Positions 8,241 through 63,474 of a stretch of 64,000 nucleotides of DNA are shown in pieces. A program made the translations under genes and the position numbers. Positions within the stretch are counted from its first letter, which is position 1. Each line of letters begins with the position of its first letter. Location: positions 2,604,001 to 2,668,000 of the forward strand of contig NC_088810.1 in NCBI RefSeq assembly GCF_011386835.1, in the 5' to 3' direction. Below the pieces are notes generated by a model. It ran no database searches. It was not told the DNA's origin and was given only the letters and a program-made list of their open reading frames with translations. This stretch comes from Chrysemys picta bellii. Taxonomy: Eukaryota.

Positions 8241-9452
8241 TTAGCTTTCCTTGTTGTCATATGGATTTAGCTTCTGTAGGATTCTTTGGGCATCTTCAGT
8301 AGCACGGCTGAGAAAGGTTTTCAGCAGGATATACTTGGTAGCCAATGAAATTCCAAAAGCAACCAAGAGTCCTACCCCTACAACTCCTCCAGACACCATG
8401 AATCCTAGCACCCGTAAAGGCCTCAGAAATAAATCTGCTACTATCAATATGCCACACCCAACCGAGGACAGGAGCTGCAAGACCACGTTAATGCTAATTT
8501 CCTTGGCCAGCAGGGGCTTCATAATGGCCTTCAGCTCTTCCGCTGGTTTGCCAAACTGCCTCGCGAGAGCCATGAAGGAGACATCATCGAGGCCAAAGAC
8601 CTGGCAATAATATCTCATGCATGTCAGCAGGATGGTTACGTCAATAATGGTGGAGACACCGGGTATGTGAATAACCGTGAGAAGAGAGGACGCAAGAGCT
8701 ATTTTCCAGATCTGCTTCTGCAGGGCTTCCTTTTTCTTTTGCAAGATTTGCAGAGAGGAGTTGGGCAGGGCCAGTATCAAAGCCCTTTTCTTGTCGCCCG
8801 GGAGCGCTTTCTCCATGCTCGCTCTCAGGAGGGGAAAATCGTACTTCTCTAATTGAAATGTACAGAGGAGGAAAACCTCAGGATTGATCATCCCTCCCAC
8901 TTCCAGGCATCTGATGCAGTGGTTACGGATGTTGTGCAGTATTTCCTCCTCATCATGGGTGGAGGGCCGGCTATGTCTGTCAGAATCCAAATCTGCCTCC
9001 ACCTTGGAGCGCACAAAGTAACACATCTTCCCTGCCTTCCGGATCTCCTGGGCGAGCTCAACATGCTTAGGTGTGAATCCCTCTGAACACATGATGATGA
9101 CAAAGTCATAGAGGACAAATTTCACCTGCTGGAGATATGCCTCTGGCTGAACATCTTCTGTCCCACTTATCGGCAGTCTCCAGAAAGTCACACTCGGGTG
9201 TTTGGGATGCTGATAAGCTGTTGGCTTCATCATAATTTCTTCCTCCTCAACTGGGGCAGCACCTTCGTCTTCATCACATAGCCCCCGCATGGCGTTAATG
9301 AAGGACGATTTCCCACAGCCTCGCTCTCCCATAATGGCGATATTTAACCTGGTGTATTCCAAAGCCCACTTCTGCATTATAGAAATCATTGTAGGTACTA
9401 ATTGAAATCCAGGAGCAGCCCTTGGTTCTCCCATGTCTTTGGCAGTCTGCCC
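8241..9452 (-). CDS. Terminal coding exon: full-length IRG (IIGP/p47) fold with degenerate GTPase motifs; unit 1
   Basis: 404-codon exon behind acceptor TTTTCAG|GGG (phase 0), internal ATG at 9434. G1 is GERGCGKS, switch I PVEEEEIMM, G3 WRLPISG, G4 SKVEAD. The C-terminal helical region aligns with the + strand IRGs. Confidence 0.92.
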   Translation of the reverse strand, partial: GQTAKDMGEPRAAPGFQLVPTMISIMQKWALEYTRLNIAIMGERGCGKSSFINAMRGLCDEDEGAAPVEEEEIMMKPTAYQHPKHPSVTFWRLPISGTEDVQPEAYLQQVKFVLYDFVIIMCSEGFTPKHVELAQEIRKAGKMCYFVRSKVEADLDSDRHSRPSTHDEEEILHNIRNHCIRCLEVGGMINPEVFLLCTFQLEKYDFPLLRASMEKALPGDKKRALILALPNSSLQILQKKKEALQKQIWKIALASSLLTVIHIPGVSTIIDVTILLTCMRYYCQVFGLDDVSFMALARQFGKPAEELKAIMKPLLAKEISINVVLQLLSSVGCGILIVADLFLRPLRVLGFMVSGGVVGVGLLVAFGISLATKYILLKTFLSRATEDAQRILQKLNPYDNKES

Positions 9453-16801: not shown

Positions 16802-16915
16802 CGGCTTCCCTCCCGGGAGCCCCAGGTGCGCCCACTCAGCAAAGAGCTTACAGAACCGGAGTGATTTGTGTTCGGTTTCCCATCTCTCTCCTGTCTCTCC
16901 CACTGACGCCGAGCA
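16802..16915 (-). other. Putative non-coding exon 1, unit 1
   Basis: Strong donor GCCG|GTAAGT ~127 nt downstream of an ISRE; the 5' end is approximate. Confidence 0.55.
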
Positions 16916-16928
16916 GGGTGAATAATCT

Positions 16929-16941
16929 GGAAAGTGAAAGC
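16929..16941 (-). promoter_or_regulatory. ISRE/IRF element, unit 1 promoter
   Basis: GGAAAGTGAAAGC (+) = GCTTTCACTTTCC (-), matching the GAAANNGAAA consensus. Confidence 0.7.
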
Positions 16942-22162: not shown

Positions 22163-22857
22163 TCAGCCAGCCAAACGACTCCCCAATTCTTGCTGTAATA
22201 TTTCCTCTAGGAGAGGAAAGTCGTGCCGGCCATATTCAAAGTTAGACAGGAGAAAGACCTGTGGGGAAGTCACCCCTTCTCTCTGCAAGTCTTTCACGCA
22301 AGTGTCTCTGATTCTCTGCAGAATTTGCTCTTCATTATAGGTAGAAGGCCGATTCCTCCGGGCAGCAAGCAAGTTCCTGTCGACCTTGGAGCGCACAAAA
22401 TAAACCTTCTTCCCTGCTCGCTGGATCTTCCGGGCCAGGCCAGTGTGGGTGGCTGTGAAGTGACGGGAGGAGAAGATGAGGAATACATCGTATTGGCTCA
22501 AACTGAAGAGATCGTGGTCCATGTCTGATTGACGTGTCATCAACCCGAACCCCGGCAGGTCCCATATGGTAACATTGGGTTGTTTGGGAAGCTGATAAGA
22601 AGTTGGTACCATTGTCGTTTCCACCACCCCGGTTTTAGCAGCACCTTCCTCTTCATCACCCAGGCCTCTAATGACATTGACAAAGGATGATTTCCCAGCA
22701 CCCGTCTGCCCCAGGAGAGCGACGCTTCGCATGGTGTTTTGTGATGACCCCCCATCCTCCTGCCATGCAGAATCTGCTTCAGAAAGGTCACTTGTGTCAG
22801 AAGTAAATGTGTAGCTCCAGGAATCGGCACTATCCCCGTCAGAGTCCAGCCTCTGGC
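22163..22857 (-). CDS. Terminal coding exon: acidic linker plus IRG G domain, C-terminal helical domain missing; unit 2
   Basis: Acceptor TTTTCCTTTTCCAAG|GC (phase 1); open for 41 codons before ATG 22732. G1 GQTGAGKS, switch I KTGVVETTM, G3 WDLPG, G4 SKVD. Stops after QELGSRLAG. Confidence 0.88.
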
Positions 22858-22955
22858 CTTGGAAAAGGAAAAGAAACGTTTCAATTACAGTTGGCTTTAA
22901 AAGTCCCTGTTAAACATGAAACTTTCAACTCTTATTTCAGCCTTCAGTGACATTC

Positions 22956-27987: not shown

Positions 27988-28226
27988 CTGCCGGGACTCT
28001 AGAGTCTGTTTGGTATCATCCACTCTTAAGTCCCACAAGAAATAGGCTTCCGGCTGCGCTCTTCCCTCCTCATAGTCAGCCTCCAATCCAAAGGCGTGTT
28101 TGGATGGCCTCAGTTTCCATCGGCCGGGAAGACGACGCATTTTAATGATGATAAGCATTACCAACAGGGAAAGAGGAAGAAGTAGAAGAGGAAGAGGTGC
28201 CCAATAGAACCAGACACACCTGGCAC
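27988..28226 (-). CDS. Transmembrane/juxtamembrane exon, unit 2
   Basis: Acceptor TTTCTTACAG|GT (phase 1); encodes WFYWAPLPLLLLPLSLLVMLIIIKMRR; consensus donor CAG|GTGAGT (phase 0). Confidence 0.85.
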
Positions 28227-28975: not shown

Positions 28976-29326
28976 CCTTCTCCACGGTCACTCTCATCCG
29001 CACGGAAAATGTGCCCAGTTGTGGCTTGACGTGGCAGGTGTAGACCCCGTCATCCGCCAGCTGGACGTTCTTGAGTCTCAGGGACGCAATTCCCTCGTGG
29101 AATCTCTCCGGATACAGCTGGGTCCGGCCCCGGTAAGCCTTATTCTGTCTCAGCCTCTGGTCCCTCCCCTTATAGTACGTGTGAACCAGGAGATCCCGTC
29201 CCTCCGCTGTTTCCTTCTTCCAGGTGATGTTCAACAGCTGCAGGTTTCGCTCAGGTTCGAAGGAGCAGCTGAGAGTGATGTCCTCCCCTTCCTGAACTAC
29301 AATGGGCGACTCTCGTTGTCTTGCCC
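28976..29326 (-). CDS. IgV exon 2, unit 2
   Basis: 351 nt, phase 1-1 (CTCTTTAAG|GG ... AAGG|GTAGGG); close paralog of 11902-12252. Confidence 0.92.
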
Positions 29327-29838
29327 CTTAAAGAGAAAAATCAATATTTTTTGTTGAGTTTTTCAAACATCAAGCAGTGGCCCATGCACTCATGACATGC
29401 ATACGCTGTAGTCTAAAAAGTACCCACAACACAGCCTGCACCCGTTTTCCATTTCACCCCAAAATCTGTAACTGCAAAACCTGAGTGGATTAGCAGAAGG
29501 GGAGATGGTGGTTAATACTGGAGCTAGTGATGGAGGGTGTCAGAGAAGCTTTGGTATCAAAGCCATGGATGCACCAAGACGGCATGAGGGGATTTCCAAA
29601 GGGATTCAGGTGCCTACAGATGCAGAGAGGTGCTTTTGAGAATCCCTCTACGTGCCTAACTCCCTCGACTTCTATGGGAATTAAGCAACAAAAAATGGAA
29701 AAAAAAAATTGGTGTGTGTGTGTGACAATTTGCATTTAGTTGAAAAGCTGTTTTCCTCCCAACAAATGTTTGAACGGCATCTTTTCGACCAGCTGTAGCC
29801 TCAGAGGCCAGCAAAGCCCATTGTAGGAGGTGTCATAC

Positions 29839-30183
29839 TCAGCACTGTCAGCGATGTCTCCTCAGACCGCGGGCCCAGCTCAGAGTTGACGAAGCAGCTG
29901 TAAGACCCCTCGTCCTCAATGTGAACATCCCTCAGTCTCAGGGACGCGTCCCCTTTGGCGAATCCTTCTGGGTCCAGCTGCGTCCGCCCCCTGTAAGCCT
30001 CAGATTGTTTCTCCATTCCCAAAGAGTAGCTGTGGACCAGCAGATCTGGTCCATCGGCTCTTGGCTTCTTCCAGGTGACGTTCACTTGTTGATTTGCTGC
30101 CAAGCCGAGTGTGGAAAAGGTGCAGCTCAGGGTGACGTCCTCGCCGCACTGAGCTGTGATGGATAACTGTGACATGATCACCC
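29839..30183 (-). CDS. IgV exon 1, unit 2
   Basis: 345 nt, phase 1-1 (CCTTTCAG|GG ... CTGA|GTATGA); ITAQCGEDVTLSC...VTW...YRGRTQL...DEGSYSC. Confidence 0.92.
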
Positions 30184-31516
30184 CTGAAAGGAAAGCGAGG
30201 GTCAGTATTAGAGTGTTAAAATGACAAGCTATCTCTTTAACAGGTAAGAGGTTTCCAGGTCCTAATCAAAAGCTGGGGGTCTGCAGGGAAGTGTGCGATC
30301 ATCAGTCAGTCTGCAAAGAGCCAGCCTAGAGTAAGGTGGGTTGAGTTACGCCTCTCCGCCTTAGGAGCAGCCTGCTTTGTCTCTCTCTGGTTTTGGTTCT
30401 TCTGTGTCAGGGTTCTGGAGCCTAAGAAATAAGTTTGTGTTATGTCACAATCTTCCCGTAAGTGGATTTGATGTTTGTTTCTAACTTCTCTATTTGTATG
30501 CTGTCAACAGAACATCTTTCACTTTCAGAACCAGTCTCTCTCCGCCCGTACATTTTTCGGCCCTAATTGACACAGAAGCTGCTTTGTGCCCCTCTGACTG
30601 CATGAAGGGATCTGAAAATGGGTGAAAATTACAGGGCCAGTGTGGGACTCGGGGGAACCAAGAACCGGAAGCGTAGATATTAAAGCCAGAATGGACCATT
30701 ATGACCATCTGCACAACATAGGCCAGAGAAACTCATTTCCTGGCCTGCTTTTGCTAGGTTAAACAAGCCAAGCTTTTCCAGTCTCCTCTCATAAGATCAG
30801 TTCTCCATTCCTCTGATCATCCTAGCAGCCCTTCTCTGCACCTGGCCCAGGCCGGATTCATCTTCCCTGAGCAGAATTGGACACAGTTTTCCAGATGAGG
30901 TCTCCCCAGTGCCTCGTACGCTGACATGAATGTTTCTCCCAGAGCGTGACAAGGGCAGCGTGTTACAGGGACCAACATCATTTGGAAGGGGGGAGTACAG
31001 GAGCAGGGGAGAAAAACAGGCACAGCTCCAGGCCAGAGGTAAAATGTCTCCAAATCCAGACGGGACAAACGGCAAAACATTTTGTTAATGCTAGTGTGGC
31101 CATATTTTCCCAAAGGGAAAACGGGACACTGCATGGGGCTGGCCCATGGCCCCCCGCCGCCCACCCACGTGGGGCCAGCCTCAGGCCTCCCTCAAACCCC
31201 TGCACGCGGGGCTGGCCCAGAACCCCCTGTCACCTGCCCACGTGGGGCTGGGCTGGCTGGGCCCCAGCCGCTCTCCTGAGCCCTCCCTCCCATGCAGGGC
31301 TGGCGTTGCCACTTGTCTCCCCTCCCCACAGGTTCCTCCATGCCCTGCTAGGGTTCGCGCCCCACTTTTTTGATACAACTGTGCATTTGTCCAGTTTGCT
31401 CTTGCCAGCTGAGCCAGGACAGGACTTAAAAATGGGACTCCCTCGGCCAAAGCGGGACGTGTGGTCACCCTGGTTAATGCAGAGTTAAGGATGCCTGGTG
31501 ATAGCTCCTGCCTTAC

Positions 31517-31618
31517 CAGAATGTCGAGTTCAACAAAACTCAGGCTTCTGAAAACCAGGAAATACTGAGTTAAGGTCAACACCCATTTAACCTTAACTCT
31601 GGCCCCTGGAGTTGACAT
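31517..31618 (-). CDS. Candidate leader exon, unit 2 (MSTPGARVKVKWVLTLTQYFLVFRSLSFVELDIL)
   Basis: TGCCATG start and strong donor CTG|GTAAGG, but phase 0. It needs a 0-to-1 micro-exon; the candidate 30666-30708 has only a weak donor. Confidence 0.45.
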
Positions 31619-32476
31619 GGCAAGAGAATGATCGGTGTGCACACTAGTTGCCTTCAAAGGGTGGGGTGTAGCTGTATTGAACGGTGGAGGGATTAGTTGG
31701 AGCAGTGTGGGAGAGCTGTGAGTGTGACGTGCGTGGGATCTGGGACTGAGCCCCTCCACGGGTGTGATCAAAGGACCGAGGCGCACGTGTCCAAGCCTGC
31801 GTCGTTCCAATCAGAACTGTACCGAACTGGGGACTTACTGTAGAGGGTCCACAGAGCGAGCGAGTGAAGTGACAATGCGGGGCCGGTTCCCATTACGCTG
31901 CAGGCTTGTCGGACATCTGCAAGAGAAGGAGCAACATGCTCTGAAAGGCATTCGGGGCAGGATCCGGCCAGTTTGACACTGACAAACCGATTCTCAGCTC
32001 GGCCCAGCAGGGCCCTAGTGAAATGTCTCTACAAACCTAGAGAAACTAATAGAGACTGAAGCCAGGTCTACGCTACGAACGTACAGCGATATAATCACCT
32101 CGCTCAGGGGGGTGAAACATCCACCCCCCTGAGCCACGCAATTACACCGACTGAACCCCTGGTGTAGACAGCGCTAGGCCGGCTTCTCCCGTTGCCGTAG
32201 CTACTGCCTCCTGGGGTCTTACAGCGAATGTGAATTACATTTACTCCCATTTATACGACCAAACCGGTGTGAAGTGCCCTTTGAGAATCCAGCACTACCA
32301 TTCTGATCTGTTGACGTTTTTACACTTCGTTTGCACCAGGGTAAATGAGGAGCACGGGTGCAAGGAGAATCCGGATTTGGATTTTGCTACATGGACTTTG
32401 CTATCGAGTCTACACTTGCGAGGGTGTAATTCTGAGTGTGGGCCATGTTTAAACAGCCACGCAAAGGTGTAAGTAC

Positions 32477-32784
32477 CAGAGGTCCCCAAACTGTGGGGCA
32501 CGGAGGAATCTTTGGGGGGGCATGGTGGGCCAGGGCCAGCCCCCACAGGAGCATGGAGGAAGCAACACCCAGCCCCGCTCTGCCCCCATCTCAGCTTCAG
32601 GCCCACCCCCTGCCTCAGCCCCTGGCTGCGGCCCTGCTCCCAGCACCAGCCTCGGCCCCCTCACCCCTTCCACATCCACCCCCAACCCCGGAAGTGTGGC
32701 CATGTTCCCAGCCCTGGCTTGGGGCGAGGGGCGGCAGACAGGGGTAAGTGGGGGATCTGACCCTGAAAAGTTTGGGGACCACTG
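32477..32784. mobile_element. hAT-type MITE
   Basis: Termini CAGAGGTCCCCAAACT...AGTTTGGGGACCACTG. Confidence 0.7.
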
Positions 32785-33102
32785 GTTTAGATACATACTG
32801 GGGATTTGGGGCTTCTTCCCCCTCCCTTCCACCGAGCCACAAAAGTCTTCCCCCATCTCCACATGTTGCTAGGCATCATCATCCCCCAAAGGTCGGGGTC
32901 CCCCTGACTAAATCCACAGGGCACGTGAAGCTGTTACAGCCGTGACCCCGTTAGAGCAGCAGAGATCGGTTCTGTGCAGAGCCATTAACGTGCAGTTCAG
33001 TGTTTAGCAGCCATGTTCGAGGTGCCTTAGCAGGCCTTAGAAACATATTTTGGAGAAAATCCCAGCAACAAAACAGCCCCACCTGGGAGGGGAATCTCTT
33101 AC

Positions 33103-33215
33103 CTTCCACCCCAAAGGCATCAAACCCTCCGATCTTCTCGGGGTGCTGGGAGAAATGGAATAATCCCTGTTTGTTCCACCGGCACCCGCCCCATCTCTCC
33201 CCCGGCAAGGGCAGC
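33103..33215 (-). other. Putative non-coding exon 1, unit 2
   Basis: Donor GAAG|GTAAGAGATTCCC 125 nt downstream of the ISRE, with a GC box GGGGCGGG in between; the 5' end is approximate. Confidence 0.6.
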
Positions 33216-33227
33216 CTCTGAGGAACA

Positions 33228-33241
33228 GGGAAAGTGAAAGT
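33228..33241 (-). promoter_or_regulatory. ISRE/IRF element, unit 2 promoter
   Basis: GGGAAAGTGAAAGT (+) = ACTTTCACTTTCCC (-). Confidence 0.72.
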
Positions 33242-33719
33242 AAACAGGCAACCGTTTATTGAAACAGCACAAAATTCACGCAGCAGCACTGGACTAGTTT
33301 AGCTAAAGGAGGCACAGCCCTGGAACGTGCGTCCTGAAAGCCACAAAGTGATGAAGCCCTAATGTTTGCGGATGGCGCTTTATGGATTCAGGACTGGACC
33401 CTCGAGGCCTTGTCTACACACAGAGAAGTTACACGTCTTCAGCTGATGCATTTCAATTGCTTCTTAAATGCTTTGAGAGGGTCCATGCAAGGGTTTACAC
33501 TCAATGAGTTACATCGTTTAAACAAAGAAACCTGAAGTTAAATCACTTCAGCTCTGTTTCATCCCTGTAAAATCCTTGCCCAGCTGTTCCGAAAGGTTCC
33601 CCTGGCACACAGCAGCCTTGATCTCAGATACTCAAGACCAGCAGGGTTGGCAGCACTCGGTGCTTGGGTGGGACACCAGAAAATTTAAGGTGGCTCCAGG
33701 GTGTGGGGTAGGTGACTCA

Positions 33720-34330
33720 GTAGGGGACGCTCTCCCCTTGCAGTCAGTGCAATGAACCAGGGCAACACTAGAGGCGCTGTGCTGTGGGGGGCGCTCTCCT
33801 GTGGCAGGCAGGGCTGGTCCTAATGCCCCAGGGTTTTGGGGAGGGGGGTGCTCTCCCCTTGCAGTCAGTGCAATGAACCAGGGTGGTGCTAGGGGGCGCT
33901 GTGCTGCAGGGGAGTGGGGTGGGGGGCGCTTTCCCGTGGCAGGCAGGGCTGGCCCTAATGCCCCAGAAAGGCACTAGGGGGCGCTGTGCTGCAGGGCGTG
34001 GGATGGGGGCTTTCCCTGACTGTCAGGACTGGCCCCAATGCCCCAGGGCGGTGCTAGGAGGCGCTATGCTGCAGGGGAGTGGGGTGGGGGTCGCTATCCC
34101 CTTGCACTCAGTGCAATGCCCCAGGGTGGTGCTAGGGGGCGCTGTGCTGCAGGGGGCAGGGTGGGGGGCTCTCCCCTAGCTGTCAGGACAGGCCCCAATG
34201 CCCCGGGGTGGGGCTAGGGGGCGCTGTGCTGCAGGGGGCAGGGTGGGGGCTCTCCTCTGGCAGTCAGGACTGGCCCCAATGACCCAGGGAGGCGTGGGGA
34301 GGGGGCTGTGCTGCAGGGGGGCGAGGGTGG
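33720..34330. repeat. G-rich ~81 bp minisatellite, same family as 17520-18240
   Basis: Repeated GGGGGCGCTGTGCTGCAGGGG...CTCTCCCCT...GGCCCCAATGCCCCAGGG. Confidence 0.85.
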
Positions 34331-34847
34331 GCTGAACAGACCTATTTGAGCACCTCTAGCAGTTAAAGTGTTACTGCTTTCTGTATGTTTGCCAGCTGCT
34401 GAGTTTGGGTTTCCTGTTTGTTCTGGAAGGGGAAATGGGTGGGAACATGTGTTCAGAGCTAATACTGCCCTCTGCAGGCTGCCAGATGACATAAACACAC
34501 GGGACTTGGATGGCTAAACTCGGGACTTCCAATTCCTTCTCATCATGGAAAGGCGCAGAACTCATGGGTGATTCGCAGCTTCTTTGATAAGGGATGTTCC
34601 TTTTTTTGGACCCTAATGTGTCTCCATTCTGCTCCCTCCCCCAACACACATGCAGAGTGTCTCTTCATTTTTTTATTGTATTTGCATTTCAAAACACAAA
34701 AACCTGCAATCACAGTGCTAGCAAGTGGTGTTAGCTCACACATTTATGAGCTGCTGATGGATTATTTTGTCCCTCCTTTGGGAGTCTATTGCTTTTACTT
34801 TTAGATACTGGCAGGGGGAGATGAAGCTGTTTGCTCTGTAAATAATA

Positions 34848-35329: not shown

Positions 35330-36610
35330 TCCACTGTCTACCTGCTCTCTCTGAGAAGTCTCCATTGTATCCAGTTCCTGGGAAAGTCCTTGGGAGTGTG
35401 AATTCCCTTTAATGGCCCATCAGCGCATCTGGCTCCTCCATTGCTGCACCTGAAAGGCTGGTTGTGGGTGTTCCCAATAAGGCAGCCCTCCCCAGAAACC
35501 TTCTGGAAAGGATTGCAGAGAACCTCCATGAAAGTTTCCTAGAGCTCTCCATGGAGGATTCCTGGGCCATCCCTGTGCACATAAACAGCCTTTTTGGGGG
35601 AGAACCCTCTGTGAAGCTAGGGCGGCCACCGGGACTCAGATACCCACTGCACCTCACTTTTCTTTCATATTAAACAAAATATAAGAGCACGTAACCCCTA
35701 CAGTTTCATTGGAATTGCATCCTCACCAGAGGTGCCTTCCCCGGCATCACACCTGACCACGATGCTGTTCTGGGAATGGCTGGACTGCTCCGGGGTTAAA
35801 AATAGCTTCTGGCTCTCAGGAAGAATGGATCCTCTGCTCGCCTGCCTTCCATTGTCCTCCTGCTGGTCTTTGTCCAAGTGTCCTCCTCGTTGTTGCCTGA
35901 GGTGGTCTGGGACTCCCGGGAGGTATCCGTGCTGCATTTTGGGGTAGTGGTGGGGTCGCCACTGAGAATCGCATGTAGCTCATTGTAGAACCAGAACGGC
36001 TGTTCACCTCCCTTGTCTTCTGGTACCTCTGCCTGCTGAAGTGCTTTGGTTTTCACGCAGCACTGCAGTGTGTCCTGGGTGTAGCCTGTCTCCCCCATGC
36101 CCCGCGTGATCTTTGCGTAGATGTCGACGTTTCTTCGGCTGGATGGGAGCTCTGCCTGCAGAGACTCTACTCCCCACGCAGCAATAAGATCCATCACCTG
36201 CTGTGTACTCCAGGCTGGGGCGCGTTTGGAGCGTTGAGTCACCATGCTCGGCGAGCTCGCCACGCTGATCACACAGGAAATGGGAATTCAAACGTTCCCA
36301 GGGCTTTAACCGGGAAGCGGCTGTTGCCCGTGTACTTGGCTGCCGTGCAGCGGAGCTGAAAACCATCTCCGCAGCGGTCACAGCGGAACATTGTGGGACA
36401 CCGCCAGGAGGCCAATTCAGTCGACGTACACAACACTGGGTCTACACTGCCTGTCTGTCGACCCATCAACGTCGAATTCATTACGTAATTAAGTCAACGC
36501 TACAGGTGGGTTAGGTTGGCCGAAGGGACCTCGTACTGTAGATGCAGACATTTTTAGGTTGACGTAAGGCAGCTTCCTTTGACCTAACTTTGCTGTGTAG
36601 ACCAGGCCTT
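35330..36610 (-). mobile_element. Harbinger/PIF-like element remnant with frameshifted Myb/SANT-like ORF (35698-36272)
   Basis: KRAPAWSTQQVMDLIAAWG...RRNVDIYAKI...QCCVKTKAL resembles a Myb/SANT-like domain; GTCTACAC/GTGTAGAC motifs are nearby. Confidence 0.7.
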
Positions 36611-52903: not shown

Positions 52904-52917
52904 GCTTTCACTTTCCC
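52904..52917 (+). promoter_or_regulatory. ISRE/IRF element with downstream GC box, putative promoter of IRG copy C
   Basis: GCTTTCACTTTCCC, then GGGGCGGGGG at ~52942 and donor GAAG|GTAAGA at 53167. Confidence 0.7.
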
Positions 52918-52959
52918 AGGGAAGAGGAAGGGCCGGACGCGGGGCGGGGGCAGTGGGAT

Positions 52960-53167
52960 TGAGCCAGCCGCAGAGCAGAGGGAAGGGAAGAAAGAGGGGC
53001 ACACAAAGAGGGGGGCTGGCAGAAAGAGGGGGAGCTAGGAGCCCACAGAAGGCGAGACAGCAGCTGAGACACTGAGTGCAAGAGACGGGGGATCTGCGTG
53101 TGCCCACAGCTTGTTGCCCCTTCCTGGACCCATCAGCCCCCCTGAGCACAGCACAGCCTGGGCGAAG
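52960..53167 (+). other. Putative non-coding exon 1 of IRG copy C
   Basis: Ends at a strong donor AAG|GTAAGA; the 5' end is approximate. Confidence 0.55.
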
Positions 53168-55314
53168 GTAAGAGATTCCCTGCCGCCCTCCCCCCCCGAA
53201 TTCTCCCATCCCCGCTTAGGGGCCAGCTGCCGGGCTTTGATTCCAGTGTCCTCTGGTCCTGTGCGCGTGTAACGCCGACAGGCCCCGGTTGTCGGTGGGC
53301 AGAATCGAACCGGGGAGCCTCTACAGCATGAGCTAAAAGTCAACTGGCTGTTAGCTAAGGCTGTAGAGCAGAATCAATCACCACATCCAGGAAGTGTCTG
53401 GGTTACACACGGAGCCGCGATGGGGTCCAAGAAAGCTGGTGCATTCCCCGTCTTCCTGCCAGGCCTTTGGGGTGAGCAAGAGCAGCTGCAGGGCTCCCCC
53501 TGGCTCCCCCGGCCGAGGGCATGCCGAGGGAGGGCTGGGTCTGAGCACGGCTCTGCTCATTCACAGCTGATATGTTGTCCCCATCAGGGAGCAGGGTACT
53601 GGGCTGGCTCAAAAATCTCCCAACGTATGTCTGTGTCTTCATGGGGGCTGAGATCTCCCATGGACCCCGCTTCTTCCAAGGATAGGAGAGTCCTGCCCTT
53701 AATCTACGTGGGTCCAGCAAGCCGGAAATAGAACCCAGGAGTCTAGCCACCCCCTTCCTGGTGTGACCCGCTACCCCACATTGCCACCCCAACCCTTCCA
53801 AGGGGAGATGGTTCCCCTCATTCGATTTCCCGGCAGGAAGGGAGGAGAATTTGTCAGTGTGCAAAGACACCTAAAGGGTGGGTAGGGCCGGCGAGGGGAA
53901 TGGAAACTTACAGACTCTACCAAACAAAGCTTGACAATCTATTTAAGTTTCTATATTACACGTGAGTCCTTCTATAAAAGGAGAGAAAGAAGCAGAGATG
54001 GGAAACAGTGAGAGACTAGTACATCTTCTCTGCTTTGCAGAATTACCCACTGACTTCTCCCCAGGAACACTTTACTCTTCTAGAGCCAGCGATAGAACCC
54101 AGGAGCCCTGGCGCCCACCCCCACTCCTCCACCCTATGAATGGTGATGAAGGCGAGAGCCAACGTGCAAATGGGGTAACTGATGGGTGTGACGCGGTCGT
54201 ACCAAAGGGGAAACACTGTTAATCTCCAATTCTCCTCCCAGCGAGTGCAAACAGCTCCCTGAGACTGAGGGATGGTGGGGTGAGAGAGCTGCCCGCTGCC
54301 GCACCGGAGAGGTGACTCTCTGACTCCCGTGTAAACTCTTGGACTGCTTCTCCTGGGACCAAGGAATCAGCTCTGCCCCCCCCCCTTACCAGGGAGCATG
54401 GGGCAGCTGAGCCCCCAGCTAAATGTGGGGAAATGGAGGCAGCTGCAGATCCCTGGCAATGCCATGACACCCTCAAGGGGGGGAGCTCCAAAGCTCAGTG
54501 CACAGGGGTGGGCGGGAGGGGAGATGACAGATGCTGCTGCCACCAAGAGGGAGGGGGAATTTCTCTCCCCCCCGCCCCGTCTATGACAGCCTGATGGTCT
54601 GTGACAACATGAATGATACCGAGGGATTGGGAGGGAGTACCACGGCTGTGTGGTGTGGGGAGAGAAATAAACACACTGGACCCGGATGGCTAAACTCAGG
54701 GCTTCCAATTTCTTTTCATCATGGAAAGGTGCAGAACTCATGGGTGAGTCGCAGCTTCTTTGATAAGGGACGTTCCTTTTTTTGGACCCTAATGTGTCTC
54801 CATTCTGCTCCCTCCCCCAACACACACACACACACACACACTGTCTCTTGATTTTTTTATTATATTTGCATTTCAAAACAAAAAATCCTGCACTCACAGT
54901 GCTAGCAAGTGGTGTTAGCTCACACATTTATTAGCTGCTGATGTATTATTTTGTCCCTCCTTTGGGAGTCTATTGCTTCTACTCTTGGACATTGGCTGGG
55001 TGAGATGAAGCTGTTTGGGGAATTGAATAATATCCAAATAAACAAGAACCTGGAGTAAACATTTCAAAAGTGCCTTAGGAGCTAAGGGCTGGATTTTCAA
55101 AGGGATTTAGGTGCCCGAGGATGCAGAAAGGCACCTAGTGGAGTTTTTGGAAGTCCTTCAGCAGGGTAGCCACCCAACTCCCATTGATTTCCAACCTCTC
55201 TTTACATCTTTAGGTACCTAAATAGCTATGGAAATGTAGCCTTCAGTCACTTATGAAAATAGAATGTTGGTGCCTAAGTCCCTTAGGCTTTGCTATGACC
55301 TGAATCAAACAGCC

Positions 55315-56595
55315 TCCACTGTCTACCTGCTCTCTCTGAGAAGTCTCCATTGTATCCAGTTCCTGGGAAAGTCCTTGGGAGTGTGAATTCCCTTTAATGG
55401 CCCATCAGCGCATCTGGCTCCTCCATTGCTGCACCTGAAAGGCTGGTTGTGGGTGTTCCCGATAAGGCAGCCCTCCCCAGAAACCTTCTGGAAAGGATTG
55501 CAGAGAACCTCCATGAAAGTTTCCTAGAGCTCTCCATGGAGGATTCCTGGGCCATCCCTGTGCACATAAACAGCCTTTTTGGGGGAGAACCCTCTGTGAA
55601 GCTAGGATGGCCACCGGGACTCAAATACCCACTGCACCTCACTTTTCTTTCATATTAAACAAAAAATATAAGAGCACGTAACCCCTACAGTTTCATTGGA
55701 ATTGCATCCTCACCAGAGGTGCCTTCCCCAGCATCACACCTGACCACGATGCTGTTCTGGGAATGGCTGGACTGCTCCGGGGTTAAAAATAGCTTCTGGC
55801 TCTCAGGAAGAATGGATCCCGTGCTCGCCTGCCTTCCATTCTCCTCCTGCTGCTCTTTGTCCACAGTGTCCTCCTCGTTGTTGCCTGAGGTGGCCTGGGA
55901 CTCCCGGGAGGTATCCGTGCTGCATTTTGGGGCAGTGGTGGGGTCGCCACTGAGAATCGCATGCAGCTCATTGTAGAACCAGAATGGCTGTTCGCTTCCC
56001 TTGTCTTCTGGTACCCCTGCCTGCTGAAGTGCTTTGGTTTTCACACGGCACTGCTGTGTGTCCCGGGGGTAGCCTGTCTCCCCCTTGCCCCATGTGATCT
56101 TTGCGTAGATGTCGACGTTTCTTCGGCTGGATGGGAGCTCTGCCTGCAGAGACTCTACTCCCCACGCAGCAATAAGATCCATCACCTGCTGTGTACTCCA
56201 GGCTGGGGCGCGTTTGGAGCGTTGAGTCACCATGCTCGGCGAGCTCGCCACGCTGATCACACAGGAAATGGGAATTCAAACGTTCCCAGGGCTTTAACCA
56301 GGAAGGGGCTGTTGCTTCTGTACCTGGCTGCCGTGCAGCGGAGCTGAAAACGATCTCCGTAGCGGTCACAGCGGAACATTGTGGGACACCGCCAGGAGGC
56401 CAATTCAGTCAACGTACACAACACTGGGTCTACACTGCCTGTCTGTCGACCCATCAACATCGAATTCATTATGTAATTAAGTCAACGCTACAGGTGGGTT
56501 AGGTTGGCGGAAGAGACCTCACAGTGTAGATGCATACATTATTAGATCAATGTAAGGCGGCTTCCTTTGACCTAACTTTGTCATGTAGACCAGGC
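55315..56595 (-). mobile_element. Harbinger/PIF-like remnant with open Myb/SANT-like ORF (55685-56260)
   Basis: Segmental paralog of 35330-36610; 191-aa ORF without the frameshift. Confidence 0.7.
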
Positions 56596-59500
56596 CTTAA
56601 TTAATTAATACAACGGGAGCTTCATCACCACTCATCAGCAGGTCTGCACTGCCCTAGCGAGATAGCCCAGAGGGCAGCTCACAGTCTGGCCTGGGATCCA
56701 GGCCACCAGAGGGTGGGTGTGTTACTGGCTGTTCATGTCATCCAGCTCTTGTCGGGGTGGAAAAGGGAATGGAGCCAGGATCAGGGGGACACACAGAGTC
56801 CAGAGAGAGACAGGCAGTATGGGAGGGGTAAGAAACTAGGGGCTGGGGGGAAGAGGGATGGGCAGGAGGGGTCTGGGACAGTAAAATAGACAGTGATATG
56901 GGGGGATGATTTGGGGTAGGTGGGGGACTGATTGTTTTTATGAGTGTCAATTTGCACCCCTCCCCGGGAGCAGGTCAGGGTTAGAAGTAAGGGAAGGAAT
57001 GATGGTGGGTTGGAAGCCAGGTCCACACACTTTGTCAAATGACAGAACCCCTTGTTCAAGGAGACTCTATGAAGAGCCAGAGGGGAAGCTGTGGCCGGGG
57101 CTTCACAGAGCAGGGGGCTCCTGCCCGGGAGGAGGTGTGTTTGACTGGAGAAACTCCTGTGTGTGGCGTTGGGTGAGGAGCCCGGAAGAAGGGAAACTGA
57201 GGCAGCGTGCTGTGGAGCTGCTATGCCCACAAGGGGACACTCAGTGGGCAGCTGGTCTGGTTACCTGGAGGCTCTGGGTGCAAGGAGAGAGCACAGAAGT
57301 TGCTGAGGGGAGTTTTGGTGGAGCTTTTTGTCAACAAGGCGAGGTGAATCTCCGAGCAGTCACATCCCCCGTTCTCTTACTGCGTTCACCACCAGCTGCA
57401 GGTAACCTCTCTGTATGTTTATGCAAAGCTGAGGCACTGGCCTGGCTTCTTCAATGTTGGTGACTAATTGCCAGACGGGGTGTGACCCTGATAACAAAAC
57501 ACCTGCACTTTGCACCTGCCTCCTCAGAAGGGAAGCTGGGAGCTGCTGTGGCTGCAAGGCGGAGGAAGCTCTGAGGTATCTGGGGAGGGGAGGGCGTTGA
57601 GGGGAGGGGAAGAGGGGCACAAGGGGAATTATGAGCCCTGGAGGGCGCCTGAGGGGCCAGGTGGGGCAAGGCAGAGTTGTGGAGTCTTGTTATTCTTTCT
57701 GCCTTGTCCCTCCATCCCCGCCCCCGCCGGGCTGCAAGCCCAGGCTGCCGTCGGGCATAGGGGCACCAGTTTAATAATACTGCATAGGGCCCACAAATCC
57801 TAAGGACGGCCCTGGGGGCACCAAAAAGCGGTGCCCTGGCTCGGCAAGGAGGAGCTGCCTTCCAGAGGCACCAGAGAGCCAGAGCGTCGGCTTGTGGGGG
57901 CGGCGAGCCCCAGCCATGGAGAAGCCAGTGAGGCGCGGGAGGGGCAGGACCCTGCAAAGGGCGGAGGGACAAGGCTGAAAGAATAAGAAGACACCCGGCC
58001 CACCTCACGGTGGCGGAGAGTCACAGTTCCCCGCAGAGACCCCTGTGCCCTCTCCCTCACGCAGAATGGTCATGCAGACTAGACCTAATTAAAAGCACTC
58101 TACTTGGGAATAAAAAATGTCAGTCACAGGCTTTTTGCTATGCCCTGAAGTTTGTCAGACATTTATTTGCAAAAACTTTGTAGTAAGGATGAGTCAGCTG
58201 AATACAACATTCACTATTATGGACTACATGACGCAGCTCTTCTCTGTTTTATATTTTCTTAATCAGTATTTCGAAGCTGCTTTTATATTTTAAATGTACT
58301 CTTAAGCCTTCATAAAGTCATCATTCCAGATGACTACATATTTAACTCACTGAAACAGACATTATTGTAAATTAATCCGTCACAGAGGTTTAGTGTGTCC
58401 ATAACAATGTTCATTGCTTTTAGAAAAAGGGAACACTCATTTACGGTGTGTGATCTCCATAGCAATACACGTGTTTATGAAATTTCACCAACTTTAAAAA
58501 ATATGTTTCCAAAGATTTTAGGCATAACAAAGGTACTGATTTTGCTTAAAACTAGTTCATCTGATAGTCAGAAGTAAAGAAAGGGAAACTCTTTGTCCAG
58601 CTATCTGGCAGCAAAGGGCTGTTGCTTCCTTCAATGAGCGCAGCGGGGGTGGGTGGGTGAAGGGAGAAATGGATGGACAGAAAAGACTGGAAGTAAGTTT
58701 TTTTTACTATAGTAATTAAAATGTGTATTTTAGATAAGGGGGGGTCTTTTGAAGGATTTATATTAAAAACCATATGTCTGAAGATCCAAGTATTTAAGGC
58801 TAAAGATGATTGTGCATCTAAAAATCTATGCAAGGATTTTTTAGAGATGTGATTTTATAATCTTCACCATCTCACTAATGAAATATTTTTAAAGCAAATT
58901 TTACACTAAGGTCCTGTAGACTGACACGTTCTGAGTAAATATTACAGTCATGCACAACTGTTTTGGTCAGTACATTTTGAAACTGACAGTAAATACCTGG
59001 GGGTTGGCAAATTCCTGTTAAATGTCTTCATTACCCCTTGAATGGCTCTTTAACAGTTTCAGTGTTGTGCTAATAGGTCTAGCAGGCTGGAGTCTTTTTC
59101 TCTTTTAACTACTAGATCCCCTTCCCAGGAAGACTCAGAGCCTGCAGGAAGGGTCAGAACAGGGATAGGAAAACCAGTGGGGTGGACACTAAGACCCAGT
59201 GGTGCCCCAAATTTTGAGGTGCCCTACGCAGTTGCCTATGCCTGAGGATGGCCCTGGGCGCTCCCAACCACTTGGCGCTCTACGCAACCGCCTAGTTCGC
59301 CTAGTGGTTGCACCGGCCCTGCAACCACCAGTTTGAGCTGTTTAATCTCCCAGAGATTTAAAACTCGGAGCTGGACTGGAACTAGCACTGTCTAGGGTTA
59401 CTGATCCAAATTTGTGGTCATTTAAGCCAAGGATTTCCTCTCTCCCCCTGCTCCCCCAAAATGTCCTTTTCTTAAGGATCACGGGTTCTACCAATGATTT

Positions 59501-62175: not shown

Positions 62176-63474
62176 ATGGATATGGATCTAGTGTCCGTGC
62201 TCATGAAGGGTATGGAGTCCGTCTCAGTGCTCATGAAGAATATGGAGTTAATCTCAGCTCGCATGGAAGCTCTGGATCTAGGGTTGGACCCAAAGGAATT
62301 CTTCAATGGCTCCATAAAGTTGTTTGAGGAGTTCATGGATATTTTCAAAGACAAAGAACAGGCTGAAGTGGCTTCTATATCGCAGGCAGAGCTGGAGTCA
62401 TTCAAATCCACCATGCTCAATATCGCAGTCACGGGGGAGACGGGTGCCCGGAAATCGTCCTTCATCAACGCCCTCCGGGGACTGACCGCTGAGGATGACG
62501 GGGCTGCCCCAACGGGGGTGACAGAAATGACGACGAAGCCGACTGTTTATCCCTATCCAAACCACCCCAACGTGAGGCTGTGGGACCTGCCCGGCATTGG
62601 CGCCCCAGATTTTCAGCCAACCACGTACCTGCAGCAAGTGAACTTCAAACGCTATGACTTCTTCGTGATCATCGCTTCGGAGCGCTTCAAATGCAACCAC
62701 ACGGCCCTGGCCCGAGAGATCGAGAGGATGGGGAAGAGGTTCTATTTTGTGCGCTCCAAGGTGGATGAAGACTTGCGCAACGAAGAAAGGGATCACCCTA
62801 GAACATTCAGTCAGGAGAGCGTCCTGCAGCGACTCAGGATGGACTGCAGGAAACACCTGCAAAATGCAAGGATGTGCAACCCAGAGATTTTCCTTCTCTC
62901 CAGCTGTGAATTCACCAAGTATGATGCTCCTGGCCTTGTAAAGACTTTGCAGGATGATATCCAAGGTCTGCAGAGACTTGCCTTTCTGCTCAGTCTGCCA
63001 AACCTGTCTGCAGAAATCATAGAGGAGAAGAAAGCTGCCCTGAAGAAGCGGATATGGCTAATATCCCTCGCATCGGCTTTAGTCAATGTCATTCCTATCC
63101 CGCGGCTCTCTGTTGCTTGTGATATTAGCATCCTGCTAGGATCCATGATTGCCTTCTACAAGTACTTCGGTCTAGATGACATCTCCTTGCCTAATCTGGC
63201 CAGGCAGACTGGGAAACCGATAGCGGAGCTGAAGGCTGTTATCATATCTCCTGAGGCAAAAGAAATAAACAGAGATGTTGTAATCAAACTGCTGCTAAAG
63301 ACGGGTTTGCCTGGATTAACTGCAAATCTACCAGTGCTTGGTCACATATTAACTGCGGGAATCTCTTTTTTAACCACCTACTTCATGCTGTTGAGCTTTC
63401 TCAGTGAAGTGGCTGAAGATGCCGAAAGGGTTCGGAAGACCGCTTTGAAGGAAGACGGGAAAAAGCGTAAATGA
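62176..63474 (+). CDS. IRGC-like: Immunity-related GTPase copy C (432 aa) with P-loop Gly-to-Arg change
   Basis: G1 reads GETGARKS (CGG at 62449-62451 versus GGG in paralogs); three N-terminal repeats; 6-nt in-frame deletion near the C-terminus. Confidence 0.93.
   Translation: MDMDLVSVLMKGMESVSVLMKNMELISARMEALDLGLDPKEFFNGSIKLFEEFMDIFKDKEQAEVASISQAELESFKSTMLNIAVTGETGARKSSFINALRGLTAEDDGAAPTGVTEMTTKPTVYPYPNHPNVRLWDLPGIGAPDFQPTTYLQQVNFKRYDFFVIIASERFKCNHTALAREIERMGKRFYFVRSKVDEDLRNEERDHPRTFSQESVLQRLRMDCRKHLQNARMCNPEIFLLSSCEFTKYDAPGLVKTLQDDIQGLQRLAFLLSLPNLSAEIIEEKKAALKKRIWLISLASALVNVIPIPRLSVACDISILLGSMIAFYKYFGLDDISLPNLARQTGKPIAELKAVIISPEAKEINRDVVIKLLLKTGLPGLTANLPVLGHILTAGISFLTTYFMLLSFLSEVAEDAERVRKTALKEDGKKRK

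What the first reader, a model, noticed from the sequence alone, without database searches (positions are those of the whole stretch)
33090..33241. Fusion genes and a plain IRG share a similar ISRE-exon 1 module, suggesting Ig exons were inserted into an IRG gene
Seen: CTTTCACTTTCCC (13 nt) and GAAG|GTAAGAGATTCCC (17 nt) are identical between the minus-strand unit 2 promoter (33228-33240, 33090-33106) and the + strand copy C promoter (52905-52917, 53164-53180). Unit 1 has the same ISRE at 16929 with a donor 127 nt away, against 125 nt in unit 2. Established: mammalian IRGs typically have interferon-responsive promoters, non-coding 5' exons and one coding exon. Inference: the Ig-TM cassette sits inside the first intron of an IRG-type gene, i.e. 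exon shuffling that put a B7-like ectodomain under interferon control.
Basis: partly seen in the sequence, partly recalled or inferred. Interest (0 to 1): 0.7.

Follow-up and report, generated by a model that had tools for sequence, protein, structure and literature searches.

The report
Shared interferon-type first exon in turtle IRG genes
This stretch is the start region and non-coding first exon, next to an interferon-response motif, of a painted-turtle gene that joins antibody-like domains to an IRG immunity GTPase; related start cassettes sit in front of the other fusion genes and beside some plain IRG genes, but this does not show which gene type owned the cassette first.

Summary
Both motifs are exact at the stated coordinates. 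Assembled RNA contigs show that the predicted donor of unit 2 is used: exon 1 ends at 33103. It splices to a signal-peptide exon, then to two IgV exons and a TM exon, so exon 1 is a true 5' untranslated exon lying 8 nt below the ISRE.

The cassette is ISRE, about 125 nt, then GAAG|GTAAGAGATT. It is an old family in the turtle IRG cluster. A profile built from it recovers the 5' ends of three fusion paralogs in Chelydra, Pangshura, two Mauremys species and (3' half only) Carettochelys.

The link to a plain IRG is weaker.
- The copy C module shares only the two short islands. Its interior is twice as long and not detectably similar.
- It is transcribed and conserved in Mauremys, but its splice partner was not seen.
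- Copies A and B and the Chelydra and Emydura plain IRGs lack it.
- A second cassette without Ig exons lies 2.4 kb upstream of an IRG coding exon in Pelodiscus.

Sharing is therefore real, and exon 1, Ig cassette, IRG exon is an accurate description of the gene. The direction of the shuffling, Ig exons into an IRG intron or an IRG exon captured by an Ig gene, remains open. Interferon induction is untested. The scan had already noted the fusion genes on this same window.

The parts
33228..33240 (-). ISRE / IRF-E of unit 2. It reads GGGAAAGTGAAAG on the + strand, so it is inverted relative to the gene.
   Evidence: Exact match. Identical in the Chelydra ortholog at L003 1385-1395. No GAS element within about 300 nt.
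33103..33220 (-). Non-coding exon 1 of unit 2, as covered by RNA contigs. Its true 5' end is at or above 33220. It contains a GC box and a short uORF.
   Evidence: X4 contig 22 lies on 33220-33103. The joint 31916/33103 is seen in X4 and X16, and the skipped part ends CT..AC on the + strand, which is GT..AG on the gene strand. Sequence.
33090..33102 (-). First 13 nt of intron 1 (GTAAGAGATTCCC), the intronic part of the shared 17-mer.
   Evidence: GTAAGAGATT is also kept in M. reevesii L005 8024 and 21605, in the C and D copies and in M. mutica L007. Chelydra has one change.
31839..31916 (-). Exon 2 of unit 2. A 7-codon uORF comes first, then the start codon at 31893 and the signal peptide. The exon ends in phase 1.
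   Evidence: Joints 30182/31838 (cut +1) and 31916/33103. Sequence.
29839..30183 (-). IgV1 exon of unit 2, 345 nt, phase 1-1.
   Evidence: Joints in all four runs. V-set similarity.
28976..29326 (-). IgV2 exon of unit 2, 351 nt, phase 1-1.
   Evidence: Joints 29325/29838 and 28224/28974.
27988..28226 (-). Transmembrane exon of unit 2, 239 nt, ending in phase 0. It splices on to an exon that ends at 25097.
   Evidence: pieces and the loose end before 27988. The loose end maps to 25068-25097. The translation has a hydrophobic stretch.
22163..22870 (-). IRG exon of unit 2, G domain only. Its splicing to the Ig/TM exons was not seen here.
   Evidence: PF05049 hit at 4.6e-66. tblastn covers residues 53-252 of a plain IRG.
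16928..16940 (-). ISRE of unit 1 (CTTTCACTTTCCA).
   Evidence: Identical with its flanks in Pangshura L004, M. reevesii L005 and M. mutica L006.
16802..16927 (-). Predicted non-coding exon 1 of unit 1, 126 nt, donor G|GTAAGTGG. It holds a second ISRE-like site, GGGAAACCGAAC.
   Evidence: Profile hit at 16953-16733, E 4e-53. The donor is conserved in Pangshura, and a 15-nt deletion there shows the exon is not coding. No RNA was laid here.
8241..9452 (-). IRG coding exon of unit 1. It starts in phase 0 at 9452, and an in-frame ATG lies 18 nt inside it.
   Evidence: The exon boundary matches residue 350 of the Pangshura model P0124. Sequence.
52905..52917 (+). ISRE of the copy C module.
   Evidence: The D copy and the M. 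mutica ortholog each carry one different single-base change in it.
52918..53167 (+). Putative exon of the copy C module, 250 nt, GA-rich, with a GC box at 52941. It is transcribed; its splice partner is unknown.
   Evidence: Run X1 holds 0.71 of the exon's sampled words. X1 covers only exons and carries spliced contigs, so it is RNA. The module is conserved at 84% in M. mutica L007 26088-27304 and duplicated 13 kb downstream at L001 13129-14937.
53168..53180 (+). Predicted donor and intron start of the copy C module (GTAAGAGATTCCC).
   Evidence: Identical in the D copy and in M. mutica.
56352..57687 (+). 'Region X', the block shared upstream of all three plain IRG ORFs (also at 36365-37940 and 44915-46498). 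It is a candidate for the ancestral 5' region of the plain IRGs.
   Evidence: Self-BLAST identity 87-93%. Conserved in Chelydra L003 7250-8015 and Emydura L002 4624-5859. Untested by RNA.
62176..63474 (+). Plain IRG copy C ORF. Copies A and B are at 41541-42875 and 48581-49834. The acceptor lies 5 nt before the ATG.
   Evidence: PF05049 hits. Acceptor alignment.
33723..34331 (.). 80-nt minisatellite just upstream of the unit 2 promoter. Its twin lies upstream of unit 1 at 17490-18242.
   Evidence: Also present in Pangshura, M. reevesii and M. mutica.

Best explanation
Positions 33090-33241 (minus strand) hold the core promoter, the non-coding first exon and the first intron bases of unit 2, an IgV-IgV-TM-IRG gene of the painted turtle.

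Shown: exon 1 ends at 33103 at the predicted donor. It is spliced to an exon that carries the start codon and signal peptide, then to two phase 1-1 IgV exons and a TM exon. The 5' end of the assembled transcript lies 8 nt below a perfect IRF-E/ISRE.

Shown: this cassette (inverted ISRE, about 125 nt of untranslated exon, GAAG|GTAAGAGATT donor) belongs to a family of homologous 5' cassettes. They head the three fusion paralogs (units 1, 2 and 3) from softshell relatives to emydid turtles.

Inferred: ISGF3 or IRF proteins bind the ISRE and drive interferon-inducible transcription that starts a few bases downstream. The uORFs in exons 1 and 2 may dampen translation.

Probable but not proven: cassettes without Ig exons belong to the same family. 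These are the copy C and D modules in the painted turtle and Mauremys, and one 2.4 kb upstream of an IRG coding exon in Pelodiscus. If so, fusion genes and some plain IRGs use one kind of promoter and first-exon cassette, and in the fusion genes the Ig-TM exons lie between that exon and the IRG exon. Which gene type owned the cassette first is not resolved.
For: Motifs are exact.

RNA: joints 31916/33103, 30182/31838, 29325/29838 and 28224/28974 all have GT..AG ends on the gene strand and appear in 2-4 runs. X4 contig 22 spans exon 1, exon 2, IgV1 and IgV2. The start codon and signal peptide are in exon 2.

Family: an nhmmer profile hits unit 1, unit 2, Chelydra, Pangshura, M. reevesii (three copies) and M. 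mutica at E 1e-39 to 1e-55, and the 3' half twice in Carettochelys at E 3e-5. Exon interiors, with the ISRE and donor removed, are similar above shuffles for unit 2 against unit 3 (z 6.5), unit 1 against unit 3 (z 3.9), and the Pelodiscus cassette without Ig exons against unit 1 (z 3.7, p 0.002).

Orthologs keep the ISRE: unit 1 in 4 of 4 species and unit 2 in 2 of 2.

Copy C module: 71% of its words are in RNA run X1. It is conserved in M. mutica with an identical donor island. No Ig exon remnants follow the C, D, M. mutica, Pelodiscus or second M. reevesii cassettes. In Pelodiscus the cassette is followed after 2.4 kb by an acceptor and an IRG coding exon.

The known IRG gene plan matches (PMC1297648).
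Against: - The copy C module shares only two islands of 13 and 17 nt with unit 2. Its interior is twice as long and not similar to any fusion cassette (p 0.04-0.58). Each island alone has E about 0.3.
- Its splice to copy C was not observed. It lies 3.1 kb downstream of the copy B stop codon, so read-through from copy B could also explain its presence in RNA.
- The ISRE carries a change in the D copy and in M. mutica, and it is lost in Carettochelys, so constraint on it is not uniform.
- Contigs cannot place a transcription start. Low coverage and a + strand spliced contig exist above the ISRE.
- No data on interferon induction were available.
Confidence: 0.7

Rival explanations
1. One reading: an Ig-TM exon cassette (signal peptide, IgV, IgV, TM) was inserted as DNA into the first intron of an ordinary interferon-driven IRG gene. 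The cassette's promoter and first exon are therefore of IRG origin and are shared with plain IRGs by descent.
For: - Genes with the cassette exist both with and without the Ig exons between exon 1 and the IRG exon.
- The Ig exons are phase 1-1. The TM exon ends in phase 0, and the unit 1 IRG exon starts in phase 0 with an in-frame ATG 18 nt inside it, like a former 5' UTR plus start codon.
- The IRG gene plan is known.
- The data do not reject one clade for all fusion IRG domains (p-AU 0.49), so a single event is possible.
Against: - No plain IRG outside turtles was examined.
- Copies A and B and the Chelydra and Emydura plain IRGs lack the cassette and share region X instead.
- The plain A/B/C clade groups with a lizard IRG apart from the fusion domains. 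Descent would therefore need a 17-nt non-coding identity kept for a very long time, although unit 1, a fusion paralog of unit 2, has lost it.
- The IRG lineage of the Pelodiscus gene without Ig exons is unknown. It could be a fusion that lost its Ig exons.
Confidence: 0.4
2. The reverse direction: an ISRE-driven B7-like Ig-TM gene lying upstream of an IRG gene began to splice into the native acceptor of the IRG coding exon, by read-through or loss of the intervening sequence. The cassette is then of Ig-gene origin, and copies of it later landed beside plain IRGs within this rearranging cluster.
For: - The cassette is universal in the fusion paralogs but patchy among plain IRGs.
- The cluster is visibly mosaic. 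The IgV2 exons of units 1 and 2 are 85% identical in DNA while their IRG domains are 38% identical in protein. In M. mutica a unit 1 type promoter lies upstream of different Ig exons, with the counterpart of the unit 2 3' part behind them. In M. reevesii and Pangshura the stretch holding the unit 2 IRG exon is missing.
- Non-coding first exons and IRF sites are also common in B7/BTN genes (my own knowledge).
Against: - Every close Ig relative examined is itself a fusion or a decayed fusion. The 'Ig-only' P0130 is followed by an IRG G-domain remnant.
- No relic IRG promoter was found in the intron before the IRG exon; the nhmmer profile hits no other place in the window.
- The interior of the copy C module is too diverged to be a recent copy of a fusion cassette.
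Confidence: 0.3
3. The resemblance between unit 2 and the copy C module is not homology. The ISRE was selected independently for interferon control, and the donor match is a coincidence helped by the splice consensus.
For: - There is no interior similarity.
- Isolated 17-19 nt matches are not rare in this window.
- Nine of the 17 bases fit the donor consensus.
- The spacing differs twofold.
Against: - The two islands are collinear and on the same strand, with a joint chance of about 1e-4.
- Eight of the matching bases lie outside the splice consensus.
- The same donor island is kept among unit 2, unit 3 and the C, D and M. mutica copies while their interiors diverge.
Confidence: 0.2
4. The shared motifs are part of a dispersed repeat or transposable element.
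For: The cassette occurs several times per locus. The copy C module lies next to a tRNA-like SINE fragment near 53300, and repeats such as 40415-40687 recur through the cluster.
Against: - Similarity stops at the islands, with no shared flanks on either side.
- All full profile hits sit in the promoter position of genes of this cluster, on the gene strand.
- The orthologous copies are syntenic.
Confidence: 0.03

Closest known systems
Mouse Irg (p47 GTPase) gene plan (Bekpen et al. 2005, PMC1297648)
   Same: Interferon response elements lie next to the first exon. [quoted passage not shown] The GTPase is encoded on one long 3' exon, with the methionine near its start. The position and orientation of the ISRE vary. 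The genes form tandem clusters that keep duplicating.
   Different: Here a signal-peptide exon, two IgV exons and a TM exon lie between the untranslated exon and the GTPase exon, so the ORF is not on one exon. Only an ISRE was found, with no GAS element. Induction is untested.
Irga6 and Irgd alternative 5' exons, each with its own promoter (PMC1297648; PMC2848866)
   Same: Alternative untranslated first exons are spliced to one coding exon. This would fit copy C having both region X and the distant copy C module.
   Different: Use of either exon by copy C was not shown here.
Butyrophilins (B7-like Ig ectodomain joined to an intracellular B30.2 domain by exon shuffling); from my own knowledge
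   Same: A B7-like ectodomain and TM segment are joined to an intracellular innate-immunity domain encoded on a large 3' exon. The Ig exons are phase 1.
   Different: The intracellular part here is an IRG GTPase domain. Both Ig domains are V-set. No homology of the promoters was tested.
Single-ISRE bidirectional promoter between two head-to-head IRG genes 1.1 Mb away in this genome (scan note s1-329952)
   Same: One ISRE sits at the start region of turtle IRG genes. Unit 2 is also head-to-head with plain copy A, and the Pelodiscus fusion gene is head-to-head with a plain IRG.
   Different: That promoter is described as a compact CpG-rich region of 145 bases. Here the two start codons are 8.3 kb apart, and bidirectional use is only hinted at by one contig. 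I did not check that note.

Membership tests
IRG (p47) gene architecture | Encodes an IIGP/IRG GTPase domain (PF05049) | tested here: met
   unit 1 8e-78, unit 2 4.6e-66 (G domain only), copies A, B and C 1e-103 to 1e-107.
IRG (p47) gene architecture | [quoted passage not shown] | tested here: met
   Unit 2 exon 1 (33220-33103) is spliced to exon 2. The start codon is at 31893 in exon 2. Unit 1 by homology only. Copy C not shown.
IRG (p47) gene architecture | Whole ORF on a single long 3' exon | tested here: not met
   In unit 2 the ORF starts in exon 2 and runs through the IgV, IgV and TM exons. Only the GTPase part is on one exon. The feature is met for plain copies A, B and C.
IRG (p47) gene architecture | ISRE and/or GAS elements at the promoter | tested here: met
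   A perfect GAAAGTGAAAG lies 8 nt above the 5' end of the transcript contig. No GAS element within about 300 nt.
IRG (p47) gene architecture | Induction by interferon or infection | not testable with these tools
   The tissues and treatments of the coded runs are unknown.
Functional ISRE (ISGF3/IRF site) | Match to GAAANNGAAA(C/G)(T/C) with a GG upstream | tested here: met
   GGGAAAGTGAAAGT in unit 2...GC in units 1 and C. The core occurs 15 times in the window against 2.9 expected.
Functional ISRE (ISGF3/IRF site) | Kept in orthologs and paralogs beyond the neutral level | tested here: inconclusive
   Kept in unit 1 (4 species), unit 2 (2 species), unit 3 and copy C, while exon interiors are saturated. 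Changed by one base in the D copy and in M. mutica, degenerate in Pelodiscus and lost in Carettochelys. The flanks are also 85-90% conserved.
Functional ISRE (ISGF3/IRF site) | Factor binding and ISRE-dependent induction | not testable with these tools
   Needs a reporter assay or ChIP.
Exon shuffling into an intron | Inserted exons are phase-symmetric and in frame with the downstream exon | tested here: met
   IgV exons of 345 and 351 nt are phase 1-1. The TM exon ends in phase 0, and the unit 1 IRG exon starts in phase 0. This is equally expected if an Ig gene captured the IRG exon.
Exon shuffling into an intron | A homologous gene without the insert keeps the same flanking exons | tested here: inconclusive
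   In Pelodiscus the cassette is followed directly by an IRG exon, but the lineage of that IRG is unknown. For the copy C module no junction was seen and homology rests on islands only.
Exon shuffling into an intron | Donor locus of the inserted exons identified | not tested
   The closest Ig relatives found were themselves fusions or decayed fusions. More distant hits were not followed.

The most novel reading that the evidence does not exclude
An interferon-responsive promoter and first-exon cassette has been kept as a portable unit in the turtle IRG cluster since before the turtle lineages split. It has been paired both with bare IRG exons and with a signal-peptide, IgV, IgV and TM cassette placed in its first intron. 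That placement created a family of interferon-inducible transmembrane receptors with an IRG GTPase tail. The Pelodiscus gene without Ig exons and the copy C module would then be the 'empty' state of the same gene plan.
Probability: 0.35. Interest if true: 0.7.

Novelty: new variant of a known kind. Interest (0 to 1): 0.5.

Why it matters
IRG proteins are known as cytosolic, interferon-induced effectors against vacuolar pathogens. A version anchored in a membrane with a B7-like ectodomain would be a different kind of molecule. How it is regulated is the first clue to what it does. This work shows that the 5' end of one such gene is real and spliced as predicted, and that it carries the element expected for interferon control. 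The same cassette heads all fusion paralogs across turtles. This gives a concrete reporter and knock-out target, and a dated marker for reconstructing how the fusion arose. If the plain IRG link holds, it would be a clear vertebrate case of a promoter and first-exon unit reused around inserted exons.

Tried and rejected
- Extended homology between unit 2 and the copy C module. Local alignment of 900-nt regions, interior-only alignments against dinucleotide shuffles, and a profile search found only the two islands.
- Gene ranges from the look-up of encoding contigs as a source of UTR exons. The ranges run from start codon to stop codon only.
- N-terminally extended IRG protein models as a clue to upstream exons. 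The extensions map to other IRG copies, not to the module or region X.
- Ig exon remnants downstream of the cassettes without Ig exons. None were found apart from one isolated 19-mer.
- An 'Ig-only' relative as evidence that the cassette belonged to an Ig gene. It proved to be a fusion with a decayed IRG exon.
- A copy C module at the matching place in Chelydra. It is absent there.
- Shared acceptor sequence of the IRG exon in fusion and plain genes. Only a pyrimidine tract is shared, which is not informative.
- The identity of the Pelodiscus 379-aa IRG.
- Papers on turtle IRGs or Ig-IRG fusions. None were found.
Exons were handled one by one.

Full report
**Where we are.** The window is painted turtle chromosome record CM062337.1 of assembly GCA_011386835.2, at about 2.60-2.67 Mb. 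It holds an IRG gene cluster.
- On the minus strand lie two units in which IgV exons precede an IRG exon. Unit 1 has its IRG ORF at 8241-9464 and IgV exons near 11800-12270 and 13200-13570. Unit 2 has an IRG G domain at 22163-22870 and IgV exons near 28860-29336 and 29816-30190.
- On the plus strand lie three plain IRG ORFs: A (41541-42875), B (48581-49834) and C (62176-63474).
- Copies A, B and C are 87-93% identical in DNA. They share the sequence just before the ORF and a block I call region X, 4-5 kb upstream.

**The observation.** GAAAGTGAAA occurs four times in the window, three of them at these places. The spacing from the ISRE to the donor is 126 nt in unit 1, 125 nt in unit 2 and 250 nt in copy C.

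I checked how unusual a 17-nt identity is in this window. About eight isolated, unexplained exact matches of 17-19 nt exist, so the length alone proves little. The position is what counts. One copy is a donor proven by RNA. The other lies downstream of an identical ISRE, on the same strand and in the same order. From the profile search, each island scores E about 0.3 and the two lie 262 nt apart, which gives a joint chance near 1e-4 (the product is my rough inference).

**Is unit 2 exon 1 real?** Yes. I first asked which runs hold the putative copy C exon, then laid four runs on 27750-33700. Contigs give four introns with GT..AG ends on the gene strand: 33102-31917, 31838-30184, 29838-29327 and 28975-28227.
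- One X4 contig carries exon 1 (33220-33103), exon 2, IgV1 and part of IgV2.
- Exon 2 (31916-31839) opens with a seven-codon uORF whose stop overlaps the real start codon at 31893. A signal peptide follows and the exon ends in phase 1.
- The IgV exons are 345 and 351 nt, both phase 1-1. The TM exon (28226-27988) ends in phase 0 and splices on to an exon that ends at 25097.
- Exon 1 is thus a true untranslated exon. The contig's 5' end at 33220 is 8 nt below the ISRE. Contigs cannot fix a transcription start, and there is weak coverage above the ISRE, so the start is 'at or near' that point, not mapped.

**A cassette family.** The Chelydra locus L003 holds the ortholog of this promoter. It is 90% identical over about 500 nt, with the ISRE intact and one change in the donor island, and it is again head-to-head with a plain IRG 8.6 kb away.

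Using an IgV exon as the query, I found annotated Ig-IRG fusion proteins in Pangshura, Pelodiscus, Carettochelys and Chelonia and fetched loci.
- Pangshura L004 is the unit 1 ortholog. The ISRE, a second ISRE-like site and the donor are kept. A 15-nt deletion inside exon 1 shows that the exon does not code.
- M. reevesii L005 holds the unit 1 promoter and two further cassettes (7888-8025 and 21479-21606). Both end in GGTGGAAG|GTAAGAGATT.
- The first of these heads an 'Ig-only' gene that is in fact a third fusion paralog (unit 3) with a decayed IRG exon.

With the ISRE and donor removed, exon interiors are similar above shuffled controls for unit 2 against unit 3 (z 6.5) and unit 1 against unit 3 (z 3.9). 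Unit 1 against unit 2 directly is not significant. Homology of the fusion cassettes is therefore shown through intermediates. A profile built from seven cassettes hits all of them at E 1e-39 to 1e-55, and hits the 3' half twice in Carettochelys, where the ISRE is gone.

**The plain IRG side.** This is the weak link.
- The profile sees the copy C module only as two islands. Its interior is not similar to any fusion cassette (p 0.04-0.58).
- The module is real in other ways. Run X1 holds 71% of its words, and X1 behaves as a clean transcriptome.
- It is duplicated 13 kb downstream, just beyond the window (the D copy).
- It has an ortholog in M. mutica, again about 3 kb downstream of a plain IRG ORF, with an identical donor island.
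- In the D copy and in M. mutica the ISRE carries one change each. The three copies together point to an ancestral CTTTCACTTTCCCTG, which is 15 nt identical to unit 2.

Several points count against the link.
- I could not see what the module splices to.
- It lies 3.1 kb past the copy B stop codon, so read-through from copy B is possible.
- It is absent at the matching place in Chelydra.
- Copies A and B and the Chelydra and Emydura plain IRGs have no cassette. Instead they share region X, which is conserved down to a side-necked turtle.

A better example may be Pelodiscus. L008 31551-31708 has TTGCTTTCACTTCC, a second GAAAAAGAAAAG site and, 122 nt after the start of the motif, CTGGAAG|GTAAGAC. 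Its interior resembles unit 1 exon 1 (z 3.7, p 0.002). It is followed after 2.4 kb, without Ig exons, by an acceptor and an IRG coding exon annotated as a 379-residue IIGP-only protein. Only 23 residues of that protein were within reach, so its lineage is unknown.

**Direction of the event.** On a tree of the GTPase domains, the fusion domains fall into a unit 1 plus unit 3 group and a unit 2 group. Both groups include softshell-lineage members. The plain A/B/C clade includes Emydura and groups with a lizard IRG. The data do not reject a single clade of all fusion domains (p-AU 0.49). The fusion is therefore old and possibly arose once.

Both scenarios use the native acceptor of the IRG exon. 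In unit 1 the exon starts in phase 0 and has an in-frame ATG 18 nt inside it. Phase data therefore do not discriminate between them.
- Against it: the patchy presence among plain IRGs, the great age that descent would imply for a 17-nt non-coding identity, and the evident mosaicism of the cluster.
- My odds: about 0.4 for insertion into an IRG intron, 0.3 for capture of the IRG exon by an Ig gene, and the rest for no true homology with the plain copies.

**Comparison with what is known.** The mouse Irg gene plan is interferon elements of variable position and orientation, untranslated 5' exons and one long coding exon (PMC1297648). It matches the outer parts of these genes. The Ig-TM exons in between are the new feature. 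I found no paper on turtle IRGs or on such fusions. Earlier notes of this scan on the same window describe the fusion genes, and another note describes an ISRE promoter between two IRG genes 1.1 Mb away. I used these as leads only.

**Limits.**
- The runs are coded and their tissues are unknown.

**Verdict.** The unit 2 promoter and first exon are real and belong to an old, conserved cassette family of the fusion genes. Sharing with plain IRGs is probable but rests on islands and position. The exon-shuffling direction is unresolved, and interferon control is predicted but not shown.

Noticed in passing
window 32468-33505 (+): In run X2 (a second, coded species) one contig shows a plus-strand GT..AG joint from 32468 to 33215 and then runs on 33215-33505, through the unit 2 ISRE on the opposite strand. 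It may be an antisense RNA or 5' exons of plain copy A, which is head-to-head with unit 2.
   Followed up: no
window 31893-31916 and 33120-33194 (-): Both untranslated parts of unit 2 carry short uORFs. The one in exon 2 ends in TAATG, so its stop overlaps the signal-peptide start codon, a layout that suggests reinitiation control.
   Followed up: no
window 17490-18242 and 33723-34331; L004 2342-3505; L005 4445-5333; L006 355-760: An 80-nt minisatellite lies just upstream of both fusion promoters and is present in three other turtles. The two arrays are about 80% alike although the neighbouring exon 1 interiors are saturated.
   Followed up: partly
window 11825-12233 vs 28899-29307: The IgV2 exons of units 1 and 2 are 85% identical in DNA, while the IgV1 domains are about 45% and the IRG domains 38% identical in protein. 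This points to a mosaic history, probably gene conversion.
   Followed up: no
window 29926-29944 (-) and 54256-54274 (+): A 19-nt exact match links the unit 2 IgV1 exon (codons for SLRLRD) to a site 1.1 kb downstream of the copy C module donor, in the same gene orientation. No other Ig remnant is found there, so it may be chance.
   Followed up: partly
window 36365-37940, 44915-46498, 56352-57687; L003 7250-8015; L002 4624-5859: Region X is a block upstream of every plain IRG ORF, with long invariant runs even against Emydura. Near its 3' end it has donor-like sites (for example CTCTGAG|GTATCTGG). It is likely the usual promoter and first exon of the plain IRGs.
   Followed up: partly
L005 8001-16829 (Mauremys reevesii): The annotated 421-residue 'Ig-only' protein P0130 ends where an IRG G-domain remnant begins (15946-16431, weaker to 16829). 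It is a third fusion paralog whose GTPase part has decayed.
   Followed up: yes
L004 1123-3505, L005 4445-6615, L006 (Pangshura, M. reevesii, M. mutica): Gene content differs between species. In Pangshura and M. reevesii the stretch holding the unit 2 IRG exon (window about 18300-24070) is missing. In M. mutica a unit 1 type promoter lies upstream of different Ig exons, and the counterpart of the unit 2 3' part follows them. These may be real rearrangements or assembly errors.
   Followed up: no
window 30735-31145: Very high contig depth with loose ends on both sides (30800-30844, 31106-31145) inside unit 2 intron 2. It looks like a dispersed repeat expressed elsewhere, not an exon.
   Followed up: no
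window 30517-30526 (-): A fourth GAAAGTGAAA lies in forward orientation in unit 2 intron 2, 335 nt upstream of the IgV1 exon. No function is assigned.
   Followed up: no
L008 5429-8033 (Pelodiscus): The annotated first coding exon of the Pelodiscus fusion gene lies in a CpG-rich region 1.4 kb from the start codon of a minus-strand plain IRG, and 13 kb upstream of its IgV exons. The head-to-head pairing of a fusion gene and a plain IRG recurs in three turtle families.
   Followed up: no
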